A stretch of DNA of 64,000 bases from Octopus sinensis. Taxonomy: Eukaryota. Made by a program: the position numbers and the translations under genes. Shown here in pieces: positions 10,117 through 63,347 of the stretch. Positions within the stretch are counted from its first letter, which is position 1. Every line of letters starts with the position of its first letter. A model generated the notes under the pieces. The model worked only from the letters and a program-made list of their open reading frames with translations. It had not been told where the DNA came from and did no database searches. Location of the stretch: positions 190,340,001 to 190,404,000 of the forward strand of contig NC_042998.1 in assembly GCF_006345805.1 (NCBI RefSeq). Reading direction: 5' to 3'.

Positions 10117-11523
10117 TTCACATACTGATCAAGAAAAATCTATGCAGATCAATACCATTAGCTACAATCTTCTTTGTATTATCCTTCATCTTTCATAGTA
10201 ACCAGATTGAAAGCATCTGCTATTCCCAATACAGAATCTATATTTCCTGAAATAACATTGTAAATATTGCTGCTTCAGAAAATGTATTTACTTATTATTT
10301 CTCATTACAGAACTATAAACATAACTCTATTCTTTGACAATTTAGAGAGAATTAGAAACCTGAACACAGAAGGCAGCTCCAGAGTGGCATGGAAATAATG
10401 CAACTAAAGTTATAATACCATGTTAGTATAGCAACAATATCTAATTATACATATACACATATATATATATATATATTAGGAAGGGCATCCAGCTGTAGAA
10501 ACACTGCCAGATCTGACTGGACTGGTGCAGCTTTCGGGCTCCCCAGACCCCAGTTTGAACCGTCCAACCCATGCTAGCATGGAAAGCGGACGTTAAATGA
10601 TGATGATGATGATATATATATATATATAATCATCATTTAACGTCCGTTTTCCATGCTAGCATGGGTTGGACGGTTCGACCGGGGTCTGGGAAGCCAGGAG
10701 GCTGCACCAGGCTCCAGTCTGATCTGGCAGTGTTTCTACAGCTGGATGCCCTTCCTAACGCCAACCACTCCGTGAGTGTAGTGGGTGCTTTATACGTGCT
10801 ACCGGCACAGGTGCCAGGAGGGGCTGGCAACGGCCACGATCGGTTAGTGGGTTTTTACATGCCACCAACATGGAATCAGTCAAGGCGGCGCTGGCATCGG
10901 CCACGTATGGATGGTGCTAGAGAGAGGGGGGGTACAAGCACAAATATATATATATATATACATATATATATACTCATGCATGCATATATACATACACAGA
11001 CATATATATATATATATATAATACTACAAAATTAGAGAATGGAGAAACATACTTAAATCAATAAAACATCAACTATCAGATGATACCCAATCAATACTTT
11101 AATACACCATTACATATCAGTAAAGGCATTATACAAAATATACAGTAAGAGTAAATAGACAAAGAGATATAAGTAAATATATATATATATAATAGACCTG
11201 TATGTGTGTGTATTCACTTTTCAAGTGAAAACGGCTGCACGAATTGCTGCAATACTTGGGATGCATGAATAATTTGACCTTCAATTTATTATTTTTTATT
11301 AAAAATAAGTAATATTGCTTTGTATATATGATTCACTTCTTTAAAAAGGTTTCTCAATGTCAACTTCCGGTATTGGTGTAACAATGGTGAAGTTTTCCCT
11401 CTTCATTTGCGAAATCTCTCACTCTCTATCTTAATGTTTTCATTTCAAGTTTTAATTCGCTATTTGCAAACAACTACAATAAATTACTGAAAGAAATATT
11501 TACTAAGTTTATATTTACTAAGT

Positions 11524-13399: not shown

Positions 13400-15975
13400 T
13401 AGATGTAAATGATCAGTTTTCTATAGTGAAGCAAAGATGAGTGCAGGTAACCAGAGTCAATGTGGGATTCTGTAACCCTGTTAACTCTATTAAGTATGCT
13501 TGCAAATATATAAACAAAGGTTTAGATGCTGCAACATAACTTTTATGTAGAATGGCAGTCAAGAGATAAATAAAAATGACAAAGTTGCACAGTATGACAG
13601 AGGAAGATACATCAGTACCAATGAGGCTTTTTTGTGCATCTTCGGTTTTTCCATTCATGAGAGGCACCCAGCCATCATTCATCTGAGTGTCCAACTAGAG
13701 AATGGTCACAGGGTTATCTTTACAAAACAAACAGCCTTGCAACAGGCACTTTCTCCAAAAGAAACTACCCTTACTGCCTTTTGTTGGGGCAAGTAGATGA
13801 AGATGCAAGAAAACTCTTTTACTCACAATTACTCAAGTATTAACCTGGAGAAACAATAAATGGCACAAGAGAAAACGTGGAGCTGACACTCTTGCCAGAG
13901 TTTACAGTTTCCACCCAAGCCAAGCAGAATGCTACTATTTATGGCTCCTTTTGCATGAAGTATGTGGTCCCAAATCATTTGAAAATTCAAGGAGGGTAAA
14001 TGGTCATATGTGTGAAACTTGAAGGAAAGCATGCTATCAACAAAGTTTTTATAGAAAATGATAGGCATTGGGACCTTGCATTGACTGAAGTATCAGTATC
14101 AGATTCTCCAAGGAAACTTCGTAATCTTTTTGCAATTATACTGAACATGTGTCAACTTCGCAGTCCCTTACAGCTTTGGATGAAACATCATGAGGAACGG
14201 CTGAGGATTTAAAATATGCAGTTCAACAGGCAAACCTAAATATCAATATTCAGTTCTCTGAAACAATTTTTAACTAAGCGCTGATTGAAATTGAGGATCA
14301 TGTTTTGGTTATGGGAAGCAAAAATTTGCAAGAGTCTGGCTCAGGACTGCTAAAAACAGTCAAATTAATGATTTAACAAATAGCAAGAGAGACAAATTAT
14401 GACGTCACAGAGTTGGCTGCATTTGTGAATGAACATGAACCTAAACTTCTTCCAGAATAATGCTGTGCATATAATAAAATTATTTTGTCAGTCAGAGATA
14501 AAGGCAGAGGAATTTTCTTTTTTGATGCTCTTGGTGGCACAGGTAAAACATTTGTGACAACATTGCTTCTCTCCAAGGCAAGGCAACAAAAAAGAATTGC
14601 AGTTGTTGTAGCATTATCTGGCTTTGCTGTCACCATTCTCCCAGGAGGAGGAACAGCTTGTTCTGCTTTTAAATTACCACTAAACCTGGTCACAAATGAC
14701 AGTCCAATTTGTAACATAAGCAAAGGTTCAGATTCAGCAGAAGTGTTGCGCCAATGCCACCTGGTCATTTGGAATGAATGCACCATGTCACATAGAGGTG
14801 CAATGAAAGCTTTTGATAAGACCTTACAGGACATAAGAAGCAACAATTAATTTATAGGAGGAGTTACATTAGTTTTATCAGGAGACTACAGACAGACATT
14901 ACCAGCCATTCCGGGATGAACAAGATCTGACGAAATGAAAGCATCCATTAAGTCTTCACACCTATGGAATAAAGTACAGAAATTCTCCTTCAATATTAAT
15001 ATGCAAGCTTTATTACATGGGGACCAATGTGCAAAGCAGTTTTCAACGTGACTCCTTCAATTAGGAAATGAGAAAGTACCATTTGATGGGAATAGTGATA
15101 TCAATTTGGCTCATGGTGAATTCTCCAGCTGAACTGTATTTCCAGACTTAAGTAATAATTATAATTCACATAAATGATTGTGTGAAAGGTCAATTCTTGC
15201 TCAAAAAAATGACACAGTAGCAAGAATTAACCATGAATTAATGAATAAGATTCCAACAGTCATTAAGGAGTACAAATCAGTTGATTCAGTCCTTGATGAA
15301 AATCAAGCTGTCCATTACCCAACAGAGTTCCTTAATTCTCTGAAGCTACCTGGAACTTCACCACATAAACTTTTTTTGAAGGTAGGAGTCCTAATAATGC
15401 TTCTAAGAAATTTAGATCCTCCTAAATTATGCAATGGGACAAGGCTGGTTGTGAAGACATTATCACCTAATATGTTAGAAGCTACCATTATTACTGGATG
15501 CGCCTCTGGGGAAGATTTTCATACAAAGAATGTCAATCAAACCAACAGACATGCCATTTGAGTTCAAACGAACAGAATTTCCAGTGCAACTTTGCTTTGC
15601 GATGCCTATTAATAAAGCTCAAGGTCAGACTTTGCAGTTTTATGTTGGTTGCTCCAGGGTTGGTATTTTGCAAGACTTATTTGTCTATGCTCCAAACCAG
15701 GAAACAAAGAATGCTGTTTATCCAGAAGCTCTCATATAATTTCCTTCAACATATGTGACAATTTATCTCCTTTCATAAAAGTAATAAATTTTGTATTTTC
15801 ATTTATTATTATTATTATTATTATTTTATATTATGAATTCAGAATTGATTTCTCAATTGAAGAATAAATTGAATTTAGAAGAACAAATTTCTATACAACA
15901 TATTTTCCTCTTTTTTTTTATTCCAATACATAAGAAACAATTTCATTCCTGGGCAATACCGGATGCCTCTGCTAG
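13400..15975 (+). mobile_element. Decayed autonomous Helitron (Rep C-terminal part plus PIF1 helicase), with 3' terminus
   Basis: Frameshifted motifs appear in order: VNVGFCNPVNSIKYACKYINKG (~13456-13521, Rep YxxKY), RYISTNEA..FPIHERHPAIIHLSVQLENG, DALGGTGKTF (helicase motif I, ~14524), NECTMSHR, GDYRQTLP, LRNLDPPKLCNGTRL, FAMPINKAQGQTL, YVGCSRV. The 3' end is CCTGGGCAATACCGGATGCCTCTG-CTAG|T at 15948-15976. The 5' end was not found. Confidence 0.9.
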
Positions 15976-21286: not shown

Positions 21287-22190
21287 TATAATTTTATTTA
21301 ATTTGCTTTTCGAGAGAAGGAAAGTTTCTATCGAAGATGCGTATCGCCTTCACCTTCGAAACGCAGAGTAGATGAAACCATGGCGACTGAAGAAGGGGAA
21401 TTTTCCTTGTCTTATTTGTCCTGTACTCTATTTTTTTGTTATTTAAGAAAAATGTCCAGTTCCTTGGTTTTGTGTTTATGTTTTCGTTTCTCATTGTGTT
21501 CGACGTTTTTTGGGTGTCCTGTACCCATATATTTCTTTTCTCTTTCTCTTTTACTTGTTTCAGTCATTTGACTGTGGCCATGCTGGAGCACCGCCTTTAG
21601 TCAAGCAACTCGACCCCGGGACTTATTCTTTTGTAAGCCCAGTACTTATTCTATCGCTCTCTTTTGCCGAACCACTAAGTAACGGGGACATAAACACACC
21701 AGCATCGGTTGTCAAGCAATGCTAGGGGGACAAACACAGACACACAAACACACACATATATATATACATATATACGACAGGCTTCTTTCAGTTTCCGTCT
21801 ACCAAATCCACTCACAAGACATTGGTAGGCCCGGGGCTATAGCAGAAGACGCCCAAGATGCCACGCAGTGGGACTGAACCCGGAACCATGTGGTTGGTTA
21901 GCAAGCTACTTACCACACAGCCACTCCTGTGCCTTATATATATATAATTTTATTTAATTTGCTTTTCGCGGGAAGGAAAGTTTCTATCGAAGATGCGTAT
22001 CGCCTTCACCTTCGAAACGCAGAGTAGATGAAACCATGGCGACTGAAGAAGGGGAATTTTCCTTGTCTTATTTGTCCTGTACTCTATTTTTTTGTTATTT
22101 AAGAAAAATGTCCAGTTCCTTGGTTTTATGTTTATGTTTTCGTATCTCATTGTGTTCGACGTTTTTTTTGGGTGTCCTGTACCCATATAT
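21287..22190 (+). repeat. ~245-bp direct repeat pair (21287-21532 and 21947-22190) flanking a SINE
   Basis: Both copies read ATAATTTTATTTAATTTGCTTTTCG...GGGTGTCCTGTACCCATAT, with only a handful of differences. Confidence 0.9.
21540..21933 (-). mobile_element. tRNA-headed CORE-type SINE
   Basis: Head GGAGTGGCTGTGTGGTAAG..GGTTCAGTCCC (A/B boxes), MIR-core-like CTTGGGC..TCTTC, internal (TG/TA)n, tail GGCGGTGCTCCAGCATGGCCACAGTCAAATGACTGAAAC. Other copies: 48980-49405(-), 58074-58482(-), 62698-63205(+, interrupted); fragments ~6985-7150, 20700-20835, 22860-22935. Confidence 0.85.
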
Positions 22191-26878: not shown

Positions 26879-29800
26879 AGCAATCTATGGACATAATCAT
26901 ATGTAATCTTTCAGAAAATGTTAACCTAAATTCTGAAAAGATGAGCCGAGAAAAAAAATGAGAAATCTCTTCATAGAGTTTGCTGGTATGGGACATATGA
27001 TGTGTACAAAGGATGATAGTTGGGTGGAAAAGATCTAAATGGAAGAATCTTACTGAAAAGGTAGATGTGGGAAGAACTGATAAAAATGGAAAATGGATTT
27101 CAAAATACTGAACCACACAAAAGATATTACAAGGAACAGCAAGCATTGAGACACTGTGTGGCATAAAACTCATCCAACCCATACAAGCAAGGAAAAACAT
27201 ATAAAATGATAATGATGACTACGATACAAGCAATTTAATTAACTCTTCAGCAAAGAGGATCTCTTTGATTCACAGAAGCACAACTAAAGACTTAGTGATA
27301 TAAACCACTCAACAATTTTAGAGGTGCTTCTGCTTACAGTAGCCAAATTGTTCCTATGTGATGCCAATTTACAGTTAGGTAAACTGGGCCAAAAGAGAGA
27401 GAGTTAAGCATCTTAACCATAGGTAGAGTGGATTTTCTTCTCCAATAAACTATCAATGACAATCAGCAGCTCCCATAGAAAAATACCTATCACCACTTTA
27501 CTAACTGCTGAAGAAAATTAAGTTCCGGAAGGTAAATAGTACAAAATAGTATAGGATGGAAGAATGTGGGGTATAGTAGTATAGAGGGACGCAAGAAGTA
27601 TAATGAAGAAGTTATGATAGTATAGTACAGGAGTTGTGATAGTCTAGAGAAGGCAATAAGTGTTCAATTTCTGATCGTTGAGAGAAAATTATGCACATAT
27701 CTAAGGACAGTTATGTTAGGCATAACATTTATAACATGACAATTCTCATACTTCAGTGCCTTTGAATGATGATTTTAGTGATAAAATTTCCTGAATTTTA
27801 TATTCTAATATCATTAATACCTTATTAGAGTAATGTTAAAATCACGCAGTACATATGTTTACTTTGTCAATGGTATCAGTAATATAACTGCTAATAACAA
27901 TGAATGAAGTAAATAATTTCGAGGTTTTATGGCATGTAAATCATCATAATCAGCAGCATCACATCTGCTTTTCATGCTGGCATGGGTTGGACAGTTTCAG
28001 CAAGCTGCAGGGCTGTTCCAAGTCCCAGTGTCAGCTTTGGCATGGATGCTCCTCCTAATAACCACATTACAGTGCAAATCAGTCCAACCCATGCCAACAT
28101 GGAAAACAGATGTTAGATAGTGATGATATACACATACATATATTGATATATATGTATATAAGAGAGTGTGTGTGTGTGTGTGTGTGTGTGCATGCATGTG
28201 TATGTTCTTTATGCATTCAAAACTGAGTTGCTGATTTTGATGTATGAGGTATCAAAAGATTCAGTAATCTTTCAGCTAGCAAATAAACTTTATTTTCATT
28301 TAGATATTTTCTACGTTACCTCAACAACCAGCTGTAGTTATTTGAAAGACACTGCTCCACAATGATCAGGTTCCATTGGAAAGTGAAAATAGTTTCACAC
28401 TTTCAATTTGAACCAAAATTACAGTGTTGCATTACAAGAGTGATGATGTGTGAATAATGAAAGAAATTTTTCTCCAAATTAGTCACATCTGTACTACAAT
28501 AAAGAAAGCTGCCTATCATCTATCTATATATATAAAGGCTACCAAATAAACTATGTTTTTGACACAATTCTTTTACTACTAAACAGAAACAAGGTTGGGT
28601 CACACAATTTTGAGGTCATTTCCAGACAATATTTCTAATGTTTCACTTTCATCTGATGTTTCATGCATGCATAGAACTCTATTCAGACAAACATTTATGA
28701 AAATGTACACATAAATATTGTTTTAAAATAAACCACAACCAAAAATATTTCATTAAAAGATATCCATTTCTCCATATGATTTGAAGAAATAGTCACTAAC
28801 TCTCTCTCACTCTCACATACACACACACATACAAAAAAGATGTATGTATATGTATTTACACACATACATATGAAAGATAGTGTGTGAGAGAGTGAGTGTC
28901 ACACATACATGCAAAAAATACAACACCACACACCTTCACTCACTCTCTCTCTCACACACATCCATTTCATATACATGTACATACATGTTTCACTTTCTCC
29001 TCTCACTTCAAAGCAAATGTCACCTTTTCACTTTCTCTTCTCTTTCAATGTCTGCTCTCTTCAAAGCATAAGAAATGAAAAATTTTTACAGAAATTAACA
29101 ATCATATGATCCCATATGATTGAGTTGACAACTTTGCTGCTTCAAATGAAAGAATGCCATAAAAAACTTCCTTTTGTATGCACATGTGCTAAAACTTCTG
29201 TCATCATCATCATCATTTAGCGTCCGTTTTCCATGCTAGCATGGGTTGGACGGTTCAACTGGGGTCTGGGGAGCCCGAAGGCTGCACCAGGCCAGTCAGA
29301 TCTGGCAGTGTTTCTACAGCTGGATGCCCTTCCTAACGCCAACCACTCCGAGAGTGTAGTGGGTGATTTTATGTGCCACCGACACAGGTGCCAGACGAGG
29401 CTGGCGAACGGCCACGCTCGGATGGTGTTTTTATGTGCCACCGACACAGGTGCCAGACGAGGCTGGCAGACGGCCACGCTCGGATGGTGTTTTTATGTGC
29501 CACCGACACAGGTGCCAGATGAGGCTGGCGGACGGCCACGATCGGATGGTGTTTGTTACGTCCCCAAAGCACGGAGGCCAGTCTATGCGGTACTGGCTAC
29601 GGCCACGTTCGGATGATTTTCTTGTGTGCCACCGGCACTGGTACCACCGGCACTGGTACCACAAAGATACAAATTCATTGATGTTCATCTATTTGATTGT
29701 TTTGATTTGATTTGATTTTCACTTGCCTCAACAGGTCTTCACAAGTGTCACAAGAAGGAAGATATGCACATGAATTGTTATTTCTTGTAGTGTGCATATG

Positions 29801-36947: not shown

Positions 36948-37376
36948 ATACGTGTTGTGTGTGTGTGTATATGTCTCCACATATATATATTGTATCAAAA
37001 AAATATTCAGTGAAAAGCCACAGAAAATTAGATACATGTGTAGATATAATATCCAGAGACATCACGAAATAACACCATAAATATATGGAAAGGTATCATA
37101 TTTAAACATTTTGACATCTACTTAAAATTATCTACATACATATGTGTATGCTCTTACGCCTCTGTATATAAATATATATACGTGTGTATATATATATATG
37201 TTTGTATGTATGTAAAGGTGTCGAATGAAATATCATTTAACGATTGTATATATATATATATATAATATATATATATATATATACGTGTTGTGTGTGTGTG
37301 TATATACAATATATTTACATTATCTGTGAAGAAGGTGGCATTATGAAATAGAATTGAAAGATATACTTTGACTGAC

Positions 37377-37540
37377 CTGCCAACAAAATTCTCTAACACA
37401 CTGCTCTTTCCTGCACTTTGACTTCCAACGACGGCTATCTGCGGCAGATCCAAAGAGATGGGCACCCCGAGGGTGGCAAAAGCGTCCTGCAACTTATTCA
37501 CTATAGGAATAAGCTGCTCCATACCCATATTACCCGACAT
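37377..37540 (-). CDS. DNM1: Dynamin (classical, shibire/DNM1-3 type), coding exon 1 only
   Basis: ATG at 37540 in A-rich context (AAAATGT) translates [54 protein letters not shown](R). It has the G1 P-loop GSQSAGKS, and [16 protein letters not shown] fits classical dynamin rather than Drp1. The 164-nt exon ends in phase 2 (GGC AG|GTCAGT), the conserved dynamin intron-1 position. The ORF-track start at 37573 is a GTG. The symbol is a family-level label, not a resolved orthologue. Confidence 0.95.
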
Positions 37541-37900
37541 TTTTATGAAATTTTTAAAAAGAGAGGGTTCCACTCGACTTTTTTTCTTTTACACACCACG
37601 CTCTCTCTCTCTCTCTCTCTCACTCTCTCTCTTCCGTTCTTTTTCCCCTTTCACACGTGATATAAAATGATTGTTTAATAAATCCCTTTGTTGGAAAGAA
37701 ATAAACAAACAATTTATCCCTTGTTCTTGTGGTCTGTCTGTATGTATGTGTGTGAGTGGAGTGAGTGAGTGATCGGGGGGTGGCCAAGCTCTGACAGCTT
37801 CCAAACTGTGGTCAGTTTGTCATGATGGCGGAACTACTTCTATCACTGAAATGGTCGTCGGCTGACGTAGGGCCGCTTACATCCTCCTAAACTGCAATTA
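37541..37900 (-). promoter_or_regulatory. Probable dynamin 5' UTR / core promoter region
   Basis: CpG-richer island directly upstream of the ATG, with a (GA)n tract at ~37601-37632, a YY1-like CCGCCAT on the minus strand (ATGGCGG ~37825-37831) and a CRE-like TGACGT (~37863). The TSS itself cannot be seen. Confidence 0.4.
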
Positions 37901-39812: not shown

Positions 39813-40100
39813 TCAGTACTTCAATATCCTCCCGAAGAACCTGAGAGACCTGCATGGGGTGGATACAGATGTCTTTAAAATAAAACTGGATTTCTTCCTG
39901 TCAGGTGTCCCAGATGAACCAACTTCACGGCAGGAGGTGCAGATGAGGGCAGCTGCATCGAACACTCTCATGCACCAAATGGCAATTGCTAAAAAGCATT
40001 CGTGAAGTAAAATCATGTAGCAACACCAAATGGCGGTGCCCCAGCATGGCCACAGCTCGTGAGCTGAAACTAGATAAAATAAAATAAAAATAAATAAAAA
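39813..40100 (+). mobile_element. CR1-group (Jockey superfamily) LINE, 5'-truncated 3' end
   Basis: Plus frame reads QYFNILPKNLRDLHGVDTDVFKIKLDFFLSGVPDEPTSRQEVQMRAAASNTLMHQMAIAKKHS*, typical of CR1-type ORF2 C-termini. It is followed by a short 3' UTR with hairpin CAGCT-CGTG-AGCTG and a (TAAAA)n tail. Confidence 0.75.
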
Positions 40101-40413
40101 ATTCAAATAAGATCAAATTCAAAAATACAGAACACAGATGAATAAAAACCTACCAGCTAGAATGGGTCAGAGAACCCCACAGCTCTACCTATCTACAGCT
40201 CTTATGGATACACCTATAGGCTTTACTCAAGTCAGTTTGATCCTTAAGGAGATAAACATCCACTGGGCAACTTCCATTAGCTGTTTAAAAACATCTAAGG
40301 AGATCTTCACTAAAATTCTATCCAATGGAAACAACTGGTGCTTGCACCTCAGCATTTGTTGTTTATGTGACACTCTGTAATTCAGATAATGGGTTCTGCA
40401 GTTTATGGTTCTT

Positions 40414-44814: not shown

Positions 44815-45337
44815 CACATGATCATATGGTTAGTAGCAGCCAATTGCACCTCATTTAACCTTAAGTCACATGAACAATCAGTCTTAAATTTTTTGCTAGA
44901 TTTCATGAAAGCCTTAGAATCATTTGAATGTAATTCTTTACTTCTACATAATGGCAAAAATTTACTTCTACAACATTTTTTTCTTCAAATTCTAATATCC
45001 ATTATTGCTACATCTTCCCATTAAATTCAAGATAAGCTTTGTTCCTATAGCTACCCATTAAAAACATGGTTTACATTCCTGTTATATAATTCCCCATTAA
45101 ATTCAAAACATTCCATTCTCCCTGCAGCTTTCCATTAAGTCCATCAGGGTTTTGAATACTATGGAAAGCAGTCATAAAACGATGATGATGGTACCCATTC
45201 TTTCTCTATCTTTCCACTAAACCAATACTCACCATTTTTGCAGCAACTTCCTATTATATCTATGTTAGCCATTCTTTCAATACTTTCATATTAAGAGTCT
45301 TATTCTCCTTTTCTGAAATATCTCTTATAAACAAAAC

Positions 45338-45363
45338 ATGTTGTTGTTGTTGTTGTTGTTGTT

Positions 45364-45404
<41 letters not shown>

Positions 45405-45680
45405 TGTTGTTCTTCTTCTTCTTTTTCTTCTTCTTCTTCTTCGTCTTCTTCCTCCTCTTCTTCTTCGTCATCTTCTTCTTTGTCTTCTTCTTCTTCTTCT
45501 TCACCTTCTTCTTCTTCCCCCTCCTCTTCTGCTTCCTCCTCTTCTTCTTCTTCGTCTTCTTCTTCTTCGTCTTCTTCTTCTTCGTCGTCTTCTTCTTCTT
45601 CTCTTCGTCTTCTTCTTCTTCTTCCTCCTCTTCTTCTTCTCTTCTTCCTCCTCTCTTCTTCTTCTTCTTCTTCCTCCTCT

Positions 45681-45718
<38 letters not shown>

Positions 45719-45980
45719 CTCTTCTTCTTCTTCCTCTTCTTCTTCCTCTTCTTCTTCTTCTTCTTCGTCTTCTTCTTCTTCTTCTTCGTCTTCTTCTTCT
45801 TCTTCCTCCTCTTCTTCGTCGTCTTCTTCTTCTTCCTCTTCTTCTTCTTCTTCGTCTTCTTCTTCTTCTTCTTCTTCTTCTTATTCTCCTTCTTCATCTT
45901 CATCTTCTTCGTCTTCTTCTTCTTTATCATCATTGTCATTGCTGTCGTTGTTGTTGTTGTTGCAGTGGTGACAGTGGTGG
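45338..45980 (+). repeat. Long compound trinucleotide microsatellite (GTT)n(GTA)n(TTC/CTC/GTC)n
   Basis: ~640 bp, mostly imperfect TTC repeats; it generates the poly-K, poly-F and poly-S ORFs in the track. Confidence 0.95.
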
Positions 45981-47059
45981 TGAGGCTTATGCATACTTCA
46001 CATAAAATGTATATTTATGTATACCCTACATAAATCTCATTAATAACAATGGTATTTTGTTCTAGGCACAGTTTTTATTTTCAAAAGATGCTTGACATTT
46101 GAAAATTATGAACAGACACCAAATTTCTGTTATAATTCACTCCTTTAGAAATTGGTAAAATGGTTATGGCTTATAGAAAAAAATGTTTTACTAATAATAG
46201 AAGATTTATTTAACTTAGAATATTCTACATGCAAAAAAACTATTAAAAGGAGAGCAAAAGCATAAATGTCACCAAAGAAAATGGGATGAGTAAAGAGTCA
46301 TCATTACCATTTTCATTACTGACCATCATTACCATCATCACCACCACCATCCTCATCATCACCAGCATCATCATAATCAGCCTTGTTATCGCTGTTGTTA
46401 TGGTCATCATCATCATCATTGCTGTCAAAGATTACCACAGTCTAAATTTTTTGAGCCTAGATTCTAAGATGACATATGCCTGATGACATATGAAGTCATG
46501 TGCAAAGAAATAATTTAAGCGAAAGTAATAACAGGATGAAGAATATTCATCATCATCATCGTCATCATCGTTTAACGTCCGCTTTCCATGCTAGCATGGG
46601 TTGGACGATTTTGACTGAGGGCTGGCGAACCAGATGGCTGCACCAGGCTCCAATCTTGATCTGGCAGTGTTTCTACAGCTGGATGCCCATCCTAACACCA
46701 ACCACTCCATGAGTATGGTGGGTGCATTTCATGTGCCACCGGCACGGGGGCCAGTCAGGCAGTACTGGCAACGACCTCGCTCGAATCTTTTTACACATGC
46801 CACCAGCACAGACACCAGTAAGGCGACGTTGGTAACGATCATGCTCGAATGGTGCCCTTTTACGTGCCACCGGCATGGAAGCCAGTTGGCTGACAATAAT
46901 ATCATTATCACAATCATGATCATCATCACCAACCATCAAGGGAGTCTCTATATAGTTACTGAGCCAACTAGAAATAGCTGTGAAATTTCTTAAAAGAAAT
47001 GGATTTATACTGTAATTCTGAGCATACAAAAATGGACTGATCACTGACTTTAATAATAA

Positions 47060-47440: not shown

Positions 47441-48575
47441 ATTGTTTTTGGTCTAAACAATATGTTTAATGTCTCAAGATTTTTAACTGTGTTGTTTTGG
47501 TTTGGACAGTTCGGTCATTCATCTTTTACTTGTATCGGTCATTGGACTGTTGTCATGCTGAGGCACTGCCTTGAAGTGTATTAGTCAAATGCATCAACAC
47601 CAGTACTTATAGTATTATTTTTTAAGCCTGGTACTTAGTCTATTGGTCTCTTATGCTAAACAGCTAAGTTACAGGGAACATAAACAAACCAACACTAGTT
47701 GTCAAGTGGTGGTGGGATACAAGCATGAAGACACACACAGACATATATATATATATATATATATATATAGGACAAGTGAGTCCATCCCAGCCAGCCCACT
47801 TATGCATGCCTTTCCTCCCTTGGACACACGAAGACCTGTTGAGGCAAGCGAAGTCGAAATCGAACCTCATCCAATGACAGGCGTCCATGCCAACCTCCCT
47901 TCATTGGACACTAAACTCTGCTTGCGAAGACCTGTTGGGGCAAGTGAAATCGGAATCGAAATTGAACCAATCGTATGACTGGCACCCGGCAGTTGCCAGG
48001 GCCGTTTATTTGTTTGCATTCAGCCTAAGATTGAATCATTTGCTACCTACACAGCAGGTGCATAGTGTTATCCTTAATTTGATTCGAGTTTACCAAAATT
48101 GCCAATCAATTAGTGGAAACTCAATAAAACTATTCCTTACGGGTTTCCGCATTTAAAGTGACTGCAACCTTTTCTTTTAGCCTTAACTTGAGGTACAAAT
48201 GACCTAAGATACAAAGATTTTCTTAAGCGAAATTTCATGCTTTTGTGTTTTGAGATACGAGTGAAAATTGAGATGCTAATTAATTTCCAGTCACATTTTT
48301 CCGCTCGCTAGGAAATTTGAATACTTTGTCAGCCCTGATTATTCATTTCATTTTGTTGGTGAAAGTTTACTTTTATGGTGGTCTTTACCGATTTTCTAAC
48401 ATGCTCCCCCTTCATCTTCAACAAAGCCACCAAATTTGCCATGATTAATTACCCAGTGCAGCTGCACCTCTGGGTGGGCTCAGAATCTGCAGAGGCTCAG
48501 TCAAATTGCATTAAAAAACATATGCGATGGAAAGGCGAACATAATTTCCGAAAACAAAGAAAGGGATTTAGCACA

Positions 48576-48620: not shown

Positions 48621-49200
48621 ATCTATATCTGCTTCAATTTTTTTCTCTTTCGTGAGTACTGCTTCCACTCCAGTCCTTGGCAACTGACTGTCTGGCATTC
48701 CTTGTTTATTCATGTCACACATATATCATTACAGTGATAAATCCTCTACGCTTTAACTCATACCCTGCCAAGCTCTCAGTTGACAAGTGCTCTGCTTTAT
48801 CAAGTTACAAAGCTTGTAAGATAAGGTAGAAATGTTATTACATTGGGCACAATGTTATGCAATATTTAGTTACGGCTCTTTACATTCTGATGTCGAATCT
48901 CTGCATGGTTGATTTTGTCCTTCGTTTGTTTGTGGTTGATAAAATCAGTACCAGTGAAGTGCTGGGGTCTATTCAATTACTCTTTACTCTTTTATTCTTT
49001 TACTTGTTTCAGTCATTTGACTGCGGCCATGCTGGAGCACCGCCTTTAATCGAGCAACTCGACCTCAGGACTTATTCTTTTGTAAGCCCAGTACTTATTC
49101 TATCGGTCTCTTTTGCCAAACCGCTAAGTAACGGGGACATAAACACACCAGCATCGGTTGTCAAGCAATGCTAGGGGGACAAACACAGACACACAAACGC

Positions 49201-49235
<35 letters not shown>

Positions 49236-49876
49236 TATACGACGGGCTTCTTTCAGTTTCCGTCTACCAAATCCACTCACAAGGCTTTGGTTGGCCCAAG
49301 GCTATAGTAGAAGACACTTGCCCAAGGTGTCATGCAGTGGGACTGAACCCGGAACCAAGTGGTTGGTAGACAAGCTACTTACCACACAGCCACTCCTGCG
49401 CCTATGTAATTAGGTAACATTTCTCCTCAAATCTCAGGCCAAGTGCCTTTGTTAGAAACAATGGGCCAGACATGTTTTCATGGAAAACTGTAAATGAATA
49501 ACCCCACTGGTATAACCTCATTAGCACAGACTATAAAAGAAAGTACTCAATACGCTCCGTAAAGTGGTTGGTATTAGGAAGCCACGCCAAAATTGAACTG
49601 CTAGAGCAAGTTGTGATCTTCCAACTGATTAGATCCTGTCAAAATGTCAAACTTATACCAGCATAGAAATTGTGTGGAATAATGATGGTGGTGATGATGA
49701 TATATATTTTTTGTTTACAAATCAACTGACCATAACGGATTTTTAACTCTGGTTTGAAGAGGGTTTATATACCCTTCACCATTAGAGTCTGATGACAAGT
49801 CATCTATAAAACTAAGTACTCTATGAACAGACATATATTTAACTGCATGTATATATATATATATATGATGATGATG

Positions 49877-50898: not shown

Positions 50899-53784
50899 GT
50901 TTAATGTCCGCTTTCTATGCTAGCATGGGTTGGACGATTTGACTGAGGTCTGGCGAACCAGACGCCAATCTGATCTGGCAGAGTTTCTACAGCTGGATGC
51001 CCTTCCTAATGCCAACCACTCCGAGAGTGTAGTGGGTGCTTTTACGTGCCACCGGCACGAGGGCCAGTTTGGTGGTACTGGCAACGGCCACACTCAATTG
51101 GTGCTTTTTATGTGCCACCTGCACAGGAGCCAGTCCAGCGGCACTGGCAATAACCTCGCTTGAATGTTTTCAGCACAAAGTGCTAGTAAGGCGACGCAGG
51201 TAATGATCACACTCGAATGGTGTTTTTAACATGCCATCGGCACGAAGGCCAGCTTGTTGCTCTGGCAACGATCTCACTCATATGGTACTCTTAGCGCTCC
51301 ACTAGCAATGGATGCCAGTCACCGAGTTTGATTTCAATTTTGATTTCACTTGCCTCAAACAGGTCTTTGCAATCGAGTTTGATTCCGACATCCATTTTAC
51401 TTGCCTCAACTGGTCTTTGCAAGCAGAGTTTAGTGTCCAATGAAGGAAAGGCATGCATAAGTGGACTGGTTACACCCCTGGCATAGGCCACAAGGTTATA
51501 GTCTCACTTGCGCTTGCCGAATCTTCTCAAGCACAGCATATTTCCAGAGGTCCTGGTCACTAGTCATTGCCTCTCTGCAAATATTATCTGGCCAATCCTA
51601 CACCCACTGACTGTGGTACTACTTCCACAATGGTGATTATTATAATTACATAATGTAGATTATATAATCAAGATGCTTGTCAAATCATCAAAGATGTGAA
51701 ACTTTTAGACATAACATTGGATTGTAGAAATGTTGACCAACCCAACCATTGTAGAGATAACGGCAAGTCTTGATTATGCAATTTACATCATATAACTAGT
51801 AATCATCATCATCATTGTTTAACGTCCGCTTTCCATGCTAGCATGAGTTGGATGATTTTGACTGAGGGCTGGCGAACCAGATGGCTGCACCAGGCTCCAA
51901 TCTTGATCTGGTAGAGTTTCTACAGCTGGATGCCCTTCCTAATGCCAACCACTCCGAGAGTGTAGTGGGTACTTTTACGTGCCACCGGCATGGGGGGCCA
52001 GTCAGGCGGGACTGGCAACAACCTCACTCGAATCTGTTTACACATGCCACGGGCACAGGTACCAGTAAGGCGATGCTGGTAATAATCACACTCAAATGGT
52101 GCCTTTTACATGCCACCAGCACGGAAGCCAGTTATCCTCTCTGGCAACAATCACGCTTGGATGGTACTCTTAGCACCCTACTAACACAGACACAAGTGCC
52201 AGTAAGGCGATGCTGGTAATGATCACACTCGAATGGTACCTTTTATGTGCCACTGGCACGGAAGCCGGTTAGCTGCTCTGTCAATGATCACACTCGTATA
52301 GTGCTCTTTGAACCCCACTAGCACGGACGCCAGTCATCGAATTTGATTTTGATTGATTTCACTTGCCTCAACAGGTCTTCGCAAGCAGAGTTTAGTGTCC
52401 AAAGAAGGAAAAGGTACGCATAAGTGGGCTGGTTACGTCCCTGGCATAGGCCACGAGGTTATGGTCTCATTTGGCTTGCTGGGTCGTAAATGAAACATAT
52501 GTAAAATGGTGCAACTAAATACCTTACAAACAATCTTTCATGTTTTGTTTTATTTTCTTCATATACTCTGTGAAACATCTAAATTCTAGATTCACTACAA
52601 ATAATACAAATACAATATCACAGGTGAGGTTACATATCAAGTTCTAAATACTGATTATTTGTCAAGGAATTTAAAGTTTAAAGTGCACAAGATTTACACA
52701 TATGCACATGCAGACACACACACACATACACATGTCAGGCTTCTGCATAGTTTCCTTATAGCAAATTCTACTCACAAGTTATTAGTAAACCTAAGGTTAT
52801 AATGCTATAACTCCTTCATAACAACACACACTTTTTCTTTTCTGGTACTTCTTGAAAAAGGGCCTATGTTCGAAATATTGATAATTTTTCTTTTTCTCAC
52901 AGCAAATACATGTATATTCAGCTTACATTTATTTTTCATTCTTCTAGATGGAAAAGGCACTTGCTCAAGTTCCCAGGCAGTTAGATCAAATCCTGAACTG
53001 TGTAGTTGCGAAAGGAACTCCTTAACCAATAAAAACATGGTTGCAACTCATCAGTATCCTTTAACGATTTTACAAGATTATATTGAGTAGTGTATATCTT
53101 TAAGAGCTGTTTAATTATTTGATATCCTGTTTCCTGCTCAGAATAAAGTTTATCTCTATGTAAATTTGTTCTATAAGTCAAAGAGGTTTTTTGTGTTACA
53201 GACAATCAGATCAGCAAGTTCAAAAATATTTCTGGACCTCAATAATGATACTTCTCCTACTTATAATTTCTGTTTATCATCACTGTACTTCATTGACAAT
53301 ACGGAGGTTCTAGTACTTACTGGACATAATAACACTTTCCATTATACCTATGGTAATCTTAAGACTATCTTTTATCCATCAGTACTAATATTTCACTGAA
53401 TAGTCAATTTTGTGTCTATCATACTCTATCCTTGATAAAATTATTAAAATATTAGTCATTGAGTTAGTCTTATCATTTCCTCACCACATGAGTATTTCTG
53501 ATTAGATTTTTTTTATCCACTCCACATTGAACATATTAACACTAACTTAACTATCTGTAAAAACAAATACTTAAAAAAAAAAGAAAAAATACTCTCATCC
53601 ATGCAAGCTTAGAAAAAATTAAAATGCAAAGCAGTTTGTAAATGTTTGGGTTACAAATTAAAGAATTTAGAGTTGGTCTGTTGTAGTTGTTGATTGTTGT
53701 TATAAAGAGAAAAGAGTGAAGTTTTATGAAAGAATAAGAGATGAATCATTCTGAAATGTAAAAGTATTTTTAGTTAATGCTTAA

Positions 53785-54006
53785 CCCTTTCGTTACTGTA
53801 TTTATTTTGAGATGTTCTGTGTTTATTTCAATTACTTTAAATATAACAAAGAATTTAGTAAAATAACTTAGTTATCATTCAGCTAGTGTTAGGAACATAA
53901 ATTGTGACTAAGGTGTTTGGTGGAAGATTTTAATTCAAAACTTATGAAAACAAGACATTTGTACTCAGAGCCAGAGCTGATTTCAGCCGGGTTGGTAACG
54001 AAAGGG
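53785..54006. mobile_element. piggyBac-type MITE (second family)
   Basis: TTAA|CCCTTTCGTTAC ... GTAACGAAAGGG|TTAC; perfect 12-bp TIR, right TTAA mutated. Confidence 0.75.
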
Positions 54007-55921: not shown

Positions 55922-56189
55922 TGTGTGTGTGTGTGGTGTGTGTGTGTGTGTGTGCGTGTGTGCATTGCTTTAATTTCTCAAGACAACCTAGACTAGTGGA
56001 AGGAGTGCTGGACCAAAAGCTTGCAACAAAGTGGATTCCATTTAAAGGTACCCAATAGATTGTTGATGGTGTTAAACCACACAGTGGAATACCATTTTCG
56101 TTGCAAACCTACCCGAAACTGCCTCTTGTTCTATGATACAAACTTCCATTTTTAAAAAGATCTAAATTAAAACCTTCCATCATAATTTC

Positions 56190-56257
56190 ATTTATTTTTT
56201 TTTTCATTTCATCTAGTTTCAGCTCACGAGCTGTGGCCATGCAGGGGCACCACCATT
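56190..56257 (-). mobile_element. LINE 3' tail (47 nt) plus A-rich tail fused downstream of the U2 copy
   Basis: AATGGTGGTGCCCCTGCATGGCCACAGCTCGTGAGCTGAAACTAGAT (56257-56211) matches 40029-40075 at 45/47 nt and is followed by GAAATGAAAAAAAAAATAAAT. Confidence 0.9.
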
Positions 56258-56266
56258 CCGGGTGAG

Positions 56267-56458
56267 AGATGGGCTGAATCCTGAAAGTACTGCCACACCA
56301 GGCCAACCCGTGGCAAAGGCAGAGCAAGCCCCCTAACTCTTCGCCTCGTTCTAAAAATCAGTTTAATATCGATGGTCCCAAATAGGGACCATATCAGATA
56401 TTAAGCTGATAAGAACAGATGCTACACTTTGATCTTAGCCAAAAGGCCGAGTAGCTTA
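56267..56458 (-). pseudogene. U2: U2 snRNA copy (near full length; variant or retro-pseudogene)
   Basis: Minus strand reads GCTACTCGGCCTTTTGGCTAAGATCAAAGTGTAGCATCTGTTCTTATCAGCTTAATATCTGATATGGTCCCTATTTGGGACCATCGATATTAAACTGATTTTTAGAACG...CCACGGGTTGGCCTGGTGTGGCAGTACTTTCAGGATTCAGCCCATCT. It is colinear with metazoan U2, stems IIa, IIb and IV can be paired, length is ~190 nt, and several functional motifs are substituted. Confidence 0.92.
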
Positions 56459-56508
56459 ATTATGACAAAATTATTTTACTGAATTGTTATTTTCAAAATT
56501 AATTGAAA

Positions 56509-56581
56509 CAAAAGTGGCATATTCCAACAGAAATAATGGTCACAAAAGTGGCATATTCCAACAGAAATAATGGTCACAAAA
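56509..56581 (+). repeat. Perfect 34-bp tandem duplication
   Basis: CAAAAGTGGCATATTCCAACAGAAATAATGGTCA at 56509 and 56543. Confidence 0.95.
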
Positions 56582-56654: not shown

Positions 56655-57565
56655 TTTAGTTGGCCTGAGGCAATAGAAGTTAGTTGCCTAAGCTACCACA
56701 CAATGGGACTGAACTTGGGCCAACAAGGTTACGAAGCAAATTTCTTTTACCACACAGCCATGCTTAGAATGAGTCAGATGATCAAGGTATTAGCTTTATT
56801 AAGGCGGTGAGCTGGCAGAAACGTTAGCACGCCGGACGAAATGCGTAGCCGTATTTCGCCTGCTGTTACGTTCTGAGTTCAAATTCCGCCGAGGTCGACT
56901 TTGTCTTTCATCCTTTCGGGGTCGATTAAATAAGTACCAGTTACGCACTAGGGTCGATATGATCGGCTTAAGCCGATTGTCGGTCCTTGTTTGTCCTCTC
57001 TGTGTTTAGCCCCTTGTGTGTAGTAAAGAATAAGGTATTAGTTTTAGTTGGCCTGAGGCAATAGAAGTTAGTTGCCTAAGCTACCACACAATGGGACTGA
57101 ACTTGGGCCAACAAGGTTAGGAAGCAAATGTCTTTTACCACACAGCCATGCTTAGAATGAGTCAGATGATCAAGGTATTAGTTTTATTAAGACGGTGAGC
57201 TGGCAGAAACGTTAGCACGCCGGACGAAATGCGTAGCCGTATTTCGCCTGTCGTTACGTTCTGAGTTCAAATTCCGCCGAGGTCGACTTTGCCTTTCATC
57301 CTTTCGGGGTCGATTAAATAAGTACCAGTTACGCACTGGGGTCGATATAATCGGCTTAAGTCGATTGTCGGTCCTTGTTTGTCCTCTCTGTGTTTAGCCC
57401 CTTGTGGGTAGTAAAGAAACAGGTATTAGTTTTAGTTGGCCTGAGGAAATAGAAGTTAGTTGCCTAAGCTACCACACAATGGGACTGAACTTGGGCCAAC
57501 AAGGTTAGGAAGCAAATTTCTTTTACCACACAGCCATGCTGAGTCAGATGATCAAGGTATTAGCT
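56655..57565 (+). repeat. 388-bp tandem array (A-SINE-A-SINE-A)
   Basis: TTTAGTTGGCCTGAGG recurs at 56655, 57043 and 57431 (period 388). A SINE follows the first two A blocks but not the third. Confidence 0.92.
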
Positions 57566-58267
57566 TGTAGAATGAGGTGTTTAATTATTAATTAGTCAGT
57601 GAAGGAAGATCGGTAGCTAAGATCATAAAAGGCCTATGTACACTGTTATGATTGTCATTGTCGTATTTTCAGTTTGAACTTCTGATTATGAGTAATAAAA
57701 CCGTATTATTGAGATATATTTCCTTGTGTGGCAACTGTGTCATGTTGAATGGAACCGAGTCACCAGGCATCCAGTGGTGGGTGTGTCAAAGCCTCTAGTC
57801 ACAAAACTGGGGTAAGTGTAACTTTAGATGTGTTGGACATATCATGGGAAATGTTTTGGGAAGTGAAAAGTGATGTCATCCTCATAGAGCTCCATATGTA
57901 TGTGCATGCATGTGTGTGTGTGTGTGTGTGTGTGTATGAGTAGTTTGAAGTGACAGCTAGAAGGTTAAATATATGTACATAAGGGCAGTGTTTTCAGCCA
58001 GTACAAAGGAACAACTATAAGGTATCCTGATCAAGCATTCTATCTATGATGATCTCATTTTTTTAGGGATATACTCTTTTACTCTTTTACTTGTTTCAGT
58101 CATTTGACTGTGGCCATGCTGGAGCACCGCCTTTAGTCGAGCAAATCGACCCCGGGACTTATTCTTTGTAAGCTCAGTACTTATTCTATCGGTCTCTTTT
58201 GCCGAACTGCTAAGTGACGGGCCTTAAACACACCAGCATCGGTTGTCAAGCAATGCTAGGGGGACAA

Positions 58268-58317
<50 letters not shown>

Positions 58318-58907
58318 GACAGGCTTCTTTCAGTTTCCGTCTACCAAATCCACTCACAAGGCATTGGTCGGCCCGGGGCTATAGCAGAAGACACTTGCCC
58401 AAGATGCCACGCAGTGGGACGGAACCCGGAACCATGTGGTTGGCTAGCAAGCTACTTACCACACAGCCACTCCTGCGCCTATGTTGAGTATATTATCCAA
58501 TGTATTTGTTTTCCTATAGATGTGACTGAATGACATTTGGCTACTACTTCTAGCAGTTGAGTAACACCAAAGAACTCCCTCTTTGGCTCATGTTGTGAAT
58601 CTACAACTACATCATCTAATGTGTCCATGATTTTAAGATAAGGTGCAATTTTAAGGAGATTTAGCTGTTATTTCTATAAGGTCTAGAAACCATGTAGGGA
58701 TCTTCTTGGTTTATATATTAGTATTGATAAAATGTTTGTGAAGGAAAGCCTTGTCAATACAAACTGTGATGGACTTTCCAACCCAAGACAACAGAGATGG
58801 ATGGAGCCTAAAGACAAGGCAAATAATTTATACTTATGAATTTTTAATCTATTTACTGGCTTGCAGGACGACCTGTTGTGCTTGAGGAGACCTATTGTGT
58901 CAAGTTC

Positions 58908-62640: not shown

Positions 62641-63347
62641 ATAAAACGTAATGTGTGCCTGTCAGTCACGCTGGTTGAGGGAGACTAAGCAACAAATGGA
62701 GGCGTGGGTGTGTGGTAAGAAGCTTGCTTCCCAACCTGATGGTTTGAAGTTCAATCCTGCTGCATGGTACCTTGGGCAAGAGTCTTCTACTAAAGCTTCG
62801 AGCCGATCAAAGCCTTGTGAGTGGGTTTGGTAGACGGAAACTGAAAGAAGCCCGTCGTATGTGTATGTGGATCGTTTGTAGAAGTCTCAGCCAGCAGTGT
62901 TTGGGGTTTGAAGATATGCTCTAACGCTAAGCGAGAAACCCAGGGTAACCCCATAAACCGGCATACCCCACTATAATATATATATGTATGTATGTATGTA
63001 TGTGTCTTTGTCCCTCCCCCAACTGCTTGACAACCGGTGCTGGTGTGTTTATGTTCCCGTTAACTAGCGGTTCGGCAAAATAAACCAATAGAATAAGTAC
63101 CATTCTTTAAAATAGGTACTGGGGATCGATACGTACGACTAAAAATTCATCGATGCGGTGCTCCAGCATGGTCGTAGACAAGTGACTGAAACAAATAAAA
63201 GGGTAAAAGATGAAAGATATCGTCCACATATGGTGAATATGTGTTGTGCATGTACTCGCGCACAGACACACACACGCACTATGTGGACGATATTTACGCC
63301 CGAGATTTTACAGCCGTATCTGATTCTTCAAAAGTGCTTCTGGTCTT

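What the first reader, a model, noticed from the sequence alone, without database searches (positions are those of the whole stretch)
56190..56458. U2 snRNA head fused to a LINE 3' tail: candidate U2-derived SINE or U2-LINE chimeric retrocopy
Seen: a ~190-nt U2 copy (minus strand) is followed after ~10 nt (CTCACCCGG) by a 47-nt segment matching the 3' end of the CR1-group LINE at 40029-40075 at 45/47 nt, then an A-rich tail. Established: SINEs borrow LINE 3' tails for retrotransposition, snRNA-LINE chimeras arise by RT template switching (U6-L1 in mammals), and snRNA-headed SINEs (SINEU) were described in crocodilians. Inference: this is either a single template-switch product or a member of an snRNA-headed SINE family in a cephalopod, which I do not know to be described. 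No clear TSD was found.
Basis: partly seen in the sequence, partly recalled or inferred. Interest (0 to 1): 0.82.

Follow-up and report, generated by a model that had tools for sequence, protein, structure and literature searches.

The report
U2 snRNA–LINE tail chimeric retrocopy
A near-complete copy of the U2 spliceosomal RNA is fused directly to the last ~80 bases of a LINE retrotransposon, most likely a dead by-product of one LINE copying event that jumped onto a U2 RNA; this kind of event is known, though rarely seen with U2 or in a mollusc.

Summary
Rfam finds a full-model U2 at 56458..56264 (minus strand, 158.8 bits). The LINE tail follows directly and matches the LINE fragment at 40 kb (72 bp, 92%, E 1e-23).

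The donor LINE is identified. A Logan contig (L003) carries an intact 1033-aa endonuclease + reverse transcriptase ORF2 ending in the same tail. The tail folds into two hairpins, and the second shows compensatory changes across related LINE and SINE tails.

A diverged second copy of the host repeat at 53.8–54.0 kb lacks both U2 and tail, so they entered as one block. There is no target-site duplication. The U2 copy is not functional (GUAGUA reads GUAGCA).

Best reading: one template-switch chimera made by a "stringent" LINE, as already described for U6 with L2/RTE LINEs in vertebrates.

Whether it belongs to a family could not be tested, because no cephalopod genome was searchable. Published octopus repeat tables list only tens to a few hundred "SINE/U" copies. 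That argues against a high-copy U2-headed SINE but leaves a low-copy set possible. Interest is modest.

The parts
56265..56458 (-). U2 snRNA-derived segment. It runs to the U2 3' end, about 6 nt past stem-loop IV. The first 7 nt (56458-56452, TAAGCTA) are ambiguous and more likely target DNA, so the U2-derived sequence probably starts at 56451, which is U2 position ~8. It is not a functional U2: the branch-site box reads GUAGCA instead of GUAGUA, there is an extra A in GAUCAAAGUG, and CAGUUUAA reads CAGCUUAA.
   Evidence: Rfam RF00004, 158.8 bits; comparison with the paralogue
56216..56264 (-). LINE 3'-UTR-derived segment (CACCCGGAATGGTGGTGCCCCTGCATGGCCACAGCTCGTGAGCTGAAAC). It forms two adjacent hairpins and is the presumed recognition element for the LINE reverse transcriptase.
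   Evidence: Alignment to the LINE fragment at 40 kb and to the intact LINE L003, 93% over 57 nt; fold; pair counts and covariation across 9 tails
56183..56215 (-). A-rich, short-unit repeat end of the LINE tail (TAGATGAAATGAAAAAAAAAATAAATGAAATTA). The exact 3' boundary is uncertain by about 15 nt.
   Evidence: Matches the (AAAAT/AAATG)n end of the 40-kb fragment and of L003; homology of the right flank to the paralogue starts at 56182
39819..40106 (+). 5'-truncated copy of the donor LINE family: the last 63 codons of ORF2, the 3' UTR, the hairpin tail and the A-rich repeats.
   Evidence: 89.9% identity over 267 bp to the 3' end of L003; the ORF2 C-terminus has 210 HMMER relatives, including the full ORF2 P0002
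53822..54003 (+). Paralogous 'empty site': a diverged second copy, in inverted orientation, of the older repeat into which the chimera inserted. It has about 32-34 unmatched nt where the chimera locus has U2 + tail.
   Evidence: Colinear blastn hits of both flanks: 77% over 65 nt, E 1.5e-8, and 69% over 87 nt, E 3.4e-4
58075..58480 (-). One of at least 4-5 copies of a ~400-bp SINE with a tRNA-like head whose tail is a sister of the LINE tail. The core GGCGGTGCTCCAGCATGGCCACAG is the same, and the arms of hairpin 2 are changed in a compensatory way. Other copies: 21539-21934 (-), 48985-49407 (-), 62700-63210 (+), 47522-47774 (-). These show that this LINE clade mobilises non-autonomous RNAs through the tail.

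Best explanation
This is a chimeric retropseudogene made in one retrotransposition event by an APE-type, CR1/L2-like 'stringent' LINE of the host, probably an octopus.

Proposed sequence of events: the LINE reverse transcriptase started target-primed reverse transcription on the A-rich repeat end of its own RNA. It copied the ~50-nt two-hairpin 3' UTR element, then switched template to the 3' end of a mature U2 snRNA and copied that almost to its capped 5' end. The cDNA was joined into an older interspersed repeat without a target-site duplication, possibly with a small target deletion.

The product has no promoter of its own, because U2 genes use an upstream pol II promoter. It has since decayed by about 5-8% and is not a working U2. 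It may be one of a small number of independent events of this kind in the genome.

Shown: the anatomy, the direct junction, the donor LINE with an intact ORF2, the structured tail, the block insertion, the absence of a TSD, and the non-functional U2.

Inferred: the template switch itself, the order of events, and that the copy did not amplify further.
For: Full-model U2 hit, and only one in the window.

The tail is 45/47 identical in the core and 72 bp at 92%, E 1e-23, to the LINE fragment at 40 kb. It is 93% identical to the tail of L003, which carries an intact 1033-aa ORF2 with endonuclease and RVT_1 domains.

LINE homology begins right after the last U2 model position, about 6 nt past stem-loop IV, which is where a mature U2 would end.

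Both flanks match adjacent parts of a paralogue that lacks both U2 and tail.

The tail folds into two hairpins. 94.6% of cells are paired, against 20-41% in slid controls, and two pairs show double-sided changes across LINE and SINE tails.

The divergence of the two halves is similar. The tail differs from the intact LINE at 4 of 57 nt. The U2 part has about 3 changes at near-invariant positions in 60 nt.

U6 chimeras made by template switching with stringent L2/RTE LINEs are documented, and such LINEs form only chimeras (PMC4476161).

Published octopus repeat tables show few 'SINE/U' copies, 21-337 per genome.
Against: Copy number in the host genome was not measured, so a family cannot be excluded.

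RepeatModeler de novo libraries did yield a class 'SINE/U' with 194 copies in O. bimaculoides and about 337 in O. vulgaris, and none in squid or nautilus. That could be exactly this architecture.

In mammals, template switching strongly prefers U6, and U2 chimeras are very rare.

No TSD marks the event.

The empty site is a 69-77% identical paralogue, not an orthologue, so the boundaries are fuzzy.

The two substitutions in hairpin 1 of the chimera's tail preserve the fold (a loop change and G-C to G-U). That is what a still-selected SINE tail would also show, although with only two events it could be chance.
Confidence: 0.65

Rival explanations
1. The element is a copy of a low-copy (tens to hundreds) U2-headed SINE-like family of octopods. 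In this reading one founding U2-LINE-tail chimera, or a U2 gene with a LINE stub just downstream that was read through from the U2 promoter, became a master copy. Its transcripts were then repeatedly mobilised by the LINE through the shared hairpin tail.
For: The architecture is exactly head + LINE tail. The same LINE clade demonstrably drives an abundant tRNA-head SINE through a sister tail. RepeatModeler de novo libraries of two Octopus species contain a 'SINE/U' class, 194 and about 337 copies, absent from squid and nautilus. The tail substitutions in the chimera keep hairpin 1 intact.
Against: U2 has no internal promoter, so a retrocopy is normally transcriptionally dead (established knowledge, and the open problem stated for SINEU). 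A second pipeline finds only 21-28 'SINE/U' hits in the same octopus genomes and 42 in a squid, so the label may simply tag U1/U2 genes or pseudogenes. No ORF-level relative of the junction exists among 5.8 billion clustered predicted proteins, although that collection does hold contigs of the donor LINE. Only one copy lies in 64 kb, against at least 5 copies of the tRNA SINE.
Confidence: 0.2
2. Two independent events: a U2 retropseudogene or former U2 gene was there first, and a 5'-truncated LINE copy later inserted by chance exactly at its 3' end, or the reverse order.
For: No TSD brackets the composite. The tail is a very short LINE stub of the kind that is common as solitary fragments.
Against: The LINE 5' truncation point coincides within 0-3 nt with the U2 3' end, in the same orientation. 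With about 2 such tails in 64 kb, the chance of that placement is of the order of 1e-4 (own estimate). The paralogue lacks both parts, and its flanks are contiguous.
Confidence: 0.05
3. A functional U2 variant gene whose 3' flank happens to be LINE-derived, or an assembly artefact joining unrelated reads.
For: The U2 model is matched over its full length, and most stems are intact.
Against: The invariant branch-site recognition box is mutated (GUAGCA). There is an inserted A next to it, and the 5' end does not match U2. The flanks are colinear with a paralogue, as expected for a real insertion. Nothing suggests a misjoin.
Confidence: 0.03

Closest known systems
snRNA/LINE chimeric retropseudogenes made by template switching (U6/L1 in mammals; U6 with L2- and RTE-clade LINEs and their SINEs in platypus and lizard; Buzdin 2002, Garcia-Perez 2007, Doucet 2015 = PMC4476161)
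   Same: The snRNA lies at the 5' side and a 5'-truncated LINE 3' end at the 3' side, in the same orientation. The junction is direct and at the snRNA 3' end, and the snRNA is copied to or near its 5' end. The LINE is a 'stringent' one that needs its own tail, for which only chimeras are expected.
   Different: The snRNA is U2, not U6; U2 chimeras are reported as very rare. The host is a mollusc. No TSD is present. The LINE portion is minimal, about 50 nt plus the repeat tail.
SINEU (Kojima 2015, PMC4494074): SINEs with U1/U2-derived heads in crocodilians
   Same: A U2-derived 5' part on a short non-autonomous retroposon under 500 bp. No internal promoter is evident. Template switching onto snRNA is the proposed origin.
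   Different: SINEU families are multi-copy with shared structures. They end in poly-A, are thought to be mobilised by Tx1-Mar LINEs, prefer one Mariner target, and SINEU-1 shares no tail with a known LINE. They were found only in crocodilians. The element here is a single observed copy with a clearly LINE-derived hairpin tail from an APE/RT LINE with short-unit repeats.
Stringent LINE/SINE pairs with a shared structured 3' tail (for example eel UnaL2/UnaSINE1, Kajikawa and Okada 2002; Ohshima and Okada 2005; from own knowledge and as cited)
   Same: A conserved stem-loop followed by short tandem repeats at the very 3' end, shared between an autonomous LINE and non-autonomous elements. In this window the tRNA-head SINE and the LINE have sister tails with compensatory hairpin changes.
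   Different: Recognition of this particular tail by its RT has not been tested. The LINE clade (CR1 or L2) was not resolved.

Membership tests
U2 spliceosomal RNA (Rfam RF00004), as sequence origin | Covariance-model score above the curated gathering score over the whole model | tested here: met
   158.8 bits against a gathering score of 46, model positions 1-192 of 192
Functional U2 snRNA gene | Invariant branch-site box GUAGUA and a canonical 5' end (AUCGCUUCUCGG) | tested here: not met
   The box reads GUAGCA, with an extra A upstream of it. The 5' end reads UAAGCUACUCGG, and its first 7 nt look like target DNA
snRNA/LINE template-switch chimera | snRNA followed directly, in the same orientation, by the 3' end of a LINE that exists in the genome | tested here: met
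   LINE homology starts at 56264, right after U2. The donor family is present as the fragment at 39819-40106 and as the intact ORF2 contig L003
snRNA/LINE template-switch chimera | Both parts entered in one insertion event (an empty site lacks both) | tested here: met
   The paralogous copy at 53822-54003 lacks both U2 and tail, and its flanks are colinear. It is a paralogue at 69-77% identity, not an orthologue, so support is moderate
snRNA/LINE template-switch chimera | A target-site duplication flanking the whole chimera (typical for L1-made chimeras) | tested here: not met
   No flank repeat is better than in shuffles. The paralogue suggests a small target deletion instead. TSDs are not obligatory for CR1/L2-type LINEs (own knowledge), and SINEU-2 insertions, ascribed to Tx1 LINEs, also show TSD, truncation or neither
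SINEU (Kojima 2015) | 5' part derived from U1 or U2 snRNA | tested here: met
SINEU (Kojima 2015) | Many copies with nearly identical structure, not a sum of independent chimeras | not testable with these tools
   No cephalopod genome was searchable. Scans of JGI metagenomes, GTDB genomes and IMG/VR found nothing relevant. There is only one copy in the window. Published tables give 21-337 'SINE/U' copies of unknown structure
SINEU (Kojima 2015) | Poly-A 3' end, Tx1-type partner, crocodilian distribution | tested here: not met
The tail is a LINE hairpin segment plus (AAATG/AAAAT)-type repeats. The partner is an APE+RT LINE with the same tail.
SINE in the strict sense | Head with an internal RNA polymerase III promoter | not testable with these tools
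   U2 genes are transcribed by pol II from upstream elements (established knowledge). No promoter assay or cephalopod PSE model was available
SINE in the strict sense | 3' tail shared with a partner LINE | tested here: met

The most novel reading that the evidence does not exclude
Octopus genomes might harbour a small, lineage-specific family of U2-headed, promoter-less retroposons that are repeatedly mobilised by a CR1/L2-like LINE through a shared two-hairpin tail. In that case the undiscussed 'SINE/U' class in published RepeatModeler tables would be this family. It would be the first SINEU-type family outside crocodilians, and the first with an identified LINE-derived tail and partner.
Probability: 0.17. 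Interest if true: 0.6.

Novelty: new member of a known kind. Interest (0 to 1): 0.33.

Why it matters
If this is a one-off, it is a clean invertebrate example of a stringent, tail-dependent LINE switching templates onto a spliceosomal RNA. That extends to a mollusc, and to U2, a process documented mainly for U6 in vertebrates. The same process is thought to be how SINEs acquire LINE tails.

It also pins down a LINE/SINE tail pair for the dominant octopus SINE: a conserved core plus a covarying hairpin. That is useful for annotating octopus repeats.

If it turned out to be a family, it would bear on the open question raised by SINEU: how retroposons with pol II snRNA heads and no internal promoter get transcribed.

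Tried and rejected
(1) I used the 54-aa reading frame that happens to span U2, junction and tail as a probe against 5.8 billion clustered predicted proteins, to catch other copies in Logan/ENA assemblies. No candidate was found. This is weak negative evidence only.

(2) The 63-aa LINE ORF2 C-terminus in the same word-indexed search also found no candidate. Exhaustive HMMER then found 210 relatives.

(3) Exact scan for the tail 26-mer in JGI metagenomes and GTDB genomes gave 0 hits.

(4) A degenerate pattern joining the U2 3' end to the tail core, scanned in JGI metagenomes, gave 15 hits. All are one soil-bacterial locus with no U2.

(5) A clade-general tail core gave one chance hit in a Pseudomonas in GTDB and none in IMG/VR.

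(6) I hoped the adjacent 388-bp tandem array would supply an internal empty site, but the array stops before the element. The paralogue at 53.8 kb did the job instead.

(7) A TSD search found nothing above the shuffles.

(8) Searching paper full text for tail sequence strings, and for the accession numbers of the LINE contigs, found nothing useful.

(9) Random sampling of host DNA through LINE-bearing contigs was abandoned. The contigs are 3-4 kb, and at no more than a few hundred copies per 2-Gb genome the expected yield is nil.

(10) Mean lengths of 'SINE/U' copies in published tables (122-350 bp) are too heterogeneous to identify the element.

Full report
**What is there.** On the minus strand, Rfam's covariance model finds a U2 spliceosomal RNA at 56458..56264. 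It scores 158.8 bits against a gathering score of 46, with E 4.8e-33, and covers model positions 1-192 of 192. It is the only snRNA-like match in the 64-kb window. In the permissive scan, every other hit is a sub-threshold match driven by microsatellites or palindromes.

Immediately 3' of U2 lies a segment that blastn aligns to 40029-40099 on the plus strand: 72 bp, 91.7% identity, E 1.3e-23. A shared exact 32-mer occurred at least twice in none of 100 dinucleotide-preserving shuffles.

**Two refinements.** First, the "~10-nt spacer" is not a spacer. Local alignment to both available copies of the LINE shows that homology starts at CACC (56264), with a 2-nt indel (CACC-CGG-AATGG against CACC-A-AATGG). 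That is directly after the last U2 model position and about 6 nt past stem-loop IV. The fusion is therefore direct, and it sits where a mature U2 RNA would end.

Second, the first 7 nt that Rfam assigns to U2 (TAAGCTA) agree at 6 of 7 positions with the paralogous empty site (TCAGCTA), but at only 3 of 7 with the invariant U2 5' end (AUCGCUU). The U2-derived part therefore most likely begins near U2 position 8, at window ~56451.

**The tail donor.** The sequence at 39819-40106 is only a 5'-truncated LINE 3' end. It holds the last 63 codons of an ORF2 (…FKIKLDFFLSGVPDEP…), a short 3' UTR, the tail and A-rich repeats. Word-indexed protein search found nothing. An exhaustive HMMER search with the 63 residues found 210 relatives, among them P0002, a 984-aa protein with Exo_endo_phos and RVT_1 domains.

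Searching with P0002 gave P0152, 1033 aa with the same domains. It sits on a Logan contig, L003 from run SRR20902413. The 3' end of L003 is 89.9% identical over 267 bp to the window's LINE fragment, and 93% identical over 57 nt to the tail fused to U2. The donor is thus a real autonomous LINE family with at least one intact ORF2.

Two more distant LINEs, L001 and L002 (72% and 100% protein identity to P0002), end in the same core, GGYGGTGCCCCAGCATGGCCRCAG. The core is followed by a hairpin, CTGAAAC and short-unit repeats. I did not resolve the clade, so "CR1-group" remains plausible but untested.

**How the tail probably works.** The tail folds into two adjacent hairpins, at -16 to -18 kcal/mol with z-scores of -1.8 to -2.9. 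I aligned nine tails: the chimera, two copies of the donor LINE, two distant LINEs and four SINE copies. In this alignment 94.6% of cells form standard pairs, against 20-41% when partners are slid by 1-3 columns. Two pairs of hairpin 2 change on both sides (C-G to U-A) between tail types. These sequences represent only three or four independent lineages, so this is moderate support.

The window also holds at least 4-5 copies of a ~400-bp SINE with a tRNA-like head and a sister tail. So this LINE clade evidently mobilises non-autonomous RNAs through the tail. That is the behaviour of "stringent" LINEs (established knowledge: Kajikawa and Okada 2002; Ohshima and Okada 2005, as cited).

**One event or two.** Both flanks of the chimera match adjacent, colinear parts of a second, inverted and diverged copy of an older repeat 2.5 kb away. 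Flank 56512-56452 matches 53822-53885 (77%, E 1.5e-8). Flank 56182-56096 matches 53918-54003 (69%, E 3.4e-4). That copy has about 32-34 unmatched nt where the chimera locus has U2 plus tail. So U2 and tail are absent together from the paralogue, which supports a single block insertion.

Separately, the chance that an unrelated LINE stub was truncated within a few nt of the U2 3' end, in the same orientation, is of the order of 1e-4. That is my own estimate, from about 2 such tails in 64 kb. No target-site duplication is present, and the paralogue suggests a small target deletion instead.

**State of the U2 copy.** It is not a working U2. The branch-site box GUAGUA reads GUAGCA, an A is inserted just upstream of it, CAGUUUAA reads CAGCUUAA, and several stem pairs are non-canonical. 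That is about 3 changes in about 60 near-invariant positions. The tail differs from the intact LINE at 4 of 57 nt. The two halves thus look similar in age.

None of the searchable DNA collections holds cephalopod genomes. The scans found nothing, or unrelated bacterial loci. The junction-spanning reading frame has no relative among the predicted proteins.

The literature gives indirect bounds. In PMC8967140, species-specific RepeatModeler 2 libraries gave a class "SINE/U". It makes up 0.00533% of 3,637,615 elements in O. bimaculoides (194 copies) and about 337 copies in O. vulgaris. It is zero in Nautilus, Architeuthis and Euprymna. The authors do not comment on it.

A second pipeline, in PMC9795677, finds only 28 copies (3,425 bp), 21 copies (7,344 bp) and 28 copies (6,031 bp) in O. 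bimaculoides, O. vulgaris and A. fangsiao. It also finds 42 copies in the squid A. dux. The label is therefore pipeline-dependent and may simply tag U1/U2 genes and pseudogenes.

Either way, these tables give no sign of a high-copy U2-headed SINE; such a family could still be filed under "Unknown" or a LINE class. By comparison, the tRNA-Core SINEs number about 1.1 million. A set of tens to hundreds of copies remains possible.

**Comparison with what is known.** Kojima's SINEU families have U1/U2 heads. They end in poly-A, are ascribed to Tx1-Mar LINEs, prefer a Mariner target, and were found only in crocodilians. Their SINE status rests on many copies with shared structure. The present element meets only the "U2 head" criterion, so I do not file it under SINEU.

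Doucet et al. 2015 showed that U6 chimeras made by template switching occur with L2- and RTE-clade LINEs and their SINEs in platypus and lizard. They also showed that stringent LINEs form only chimeras, and that U1/U2 chimeras are very rare in mammals. The element here has that anatomy, but with U2 and in a mollusc. No paper in the held library reports snRNA-headed SINEs or snRNA/LINE chimeras in cephalopods.

**Verdict.** The element is a real U2-LINE-tail chimeric retrocopy, most likely a dead-on-arrival product of one template switch by a stringent LINE (confidence about 0.65). A low-copy U2-headed family is the main rival (about 0.2). It is a new member of a known kind, of modest interest (0.33). 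The decisive test is a simple junction search in octopus assemblies, which these tools could not run.

Noticed in passing
window ~37376-37573 (-): First coding exon of a dynamin gene (…[51 protein letters not shown], followed by an AG|GTCAGT donor). It hits Pfam Dynamin_N. The gene runs leftwards, so the U2 chimera lies about 18.6 kb upstream of it on the same strand.
   Followed up: partly
window 14485-14850 (+) and 15178-15561 (+): Two ORF fragments of a PIF1-like helicase (Pfam PIF1, E 2.4e-27; Pif1_2B_dom, E 2.8e-17). This is probably a decayed Helitron.
   Followed up: partly
window 21539-21934 (-), 48985-49407 (-), 58075-58480 (-), 62700-63210 (+), 47522-47774 (-): A ~400-bp SINE with a tRNA-like head, an internal (TA)n(TG)n microsatellite, and a tail that is a sister of the LINE tail. 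The three best copies are 90-91% alike. It is probably the dominant octopus 'tRNA-Core' SINE. Its partner LINE should carry the CAGTCAAATGACTG hairpin.
   Followed up: partly
window 56655-57566: A 388-bp tandem array, 2.4 units at 95% identity, directly 5' of the chimera's flank. Each unit is a fragment of a diverged SINE head joined to an inverted copy of another SINE-like repeat (…TTCTTTACTACCCACAAGGGGCTAAACACAGAGAGGAC…). The start of that second repeat also lies just 3' of the LINE tail in L001 (ENA ERZ4233750), so that metagenome contig comes from a related host.
   Followed up: partly
window 56508-56581: A perfect 34-bp tandem duplication (2.2 copies, 100% identity) about 50 bp upstream of the U2 5' end. 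It looks recent and unrelated to the insertion.
   Followed up: no
window 10661-11035, 29233-29710, 46634-46993, 51881-52219 (+): At least four copies of a repeat whose spurious ORFs all begin …DLAVFLQLDALPNANHS…. It is an unclassified interspersed repeat.
   Followed up: no
window 10557-10676 (both strands): A palindromic hit to mir-2513 on both strands, about 72 bits, below the gathering score of 89. It is probably an inverted-repeat transposon hairpin and not a miRNA gene.
   Followed up: no
window 45325-46033: A ~700-bp purine-rich low-complexity tract that gives long K/R/E-rich and S/F-rich ORFs on the two strands. It is simple-sequence DNA, not a gene.
   Followed up: no
literature: PMC8967140 Table S2; PMC9795677 Tables s5/s7: Published cephalopod repeat tables contain an undiscussed 'SINE/U' class: 194 and about 337 copies in two Octopus species by de novo libraries, and 21-42 by another pipeline. 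There is also an unusually high 'snRNA' share in Architeuthis dux, 0.59% of elements.
   Followed up: partly
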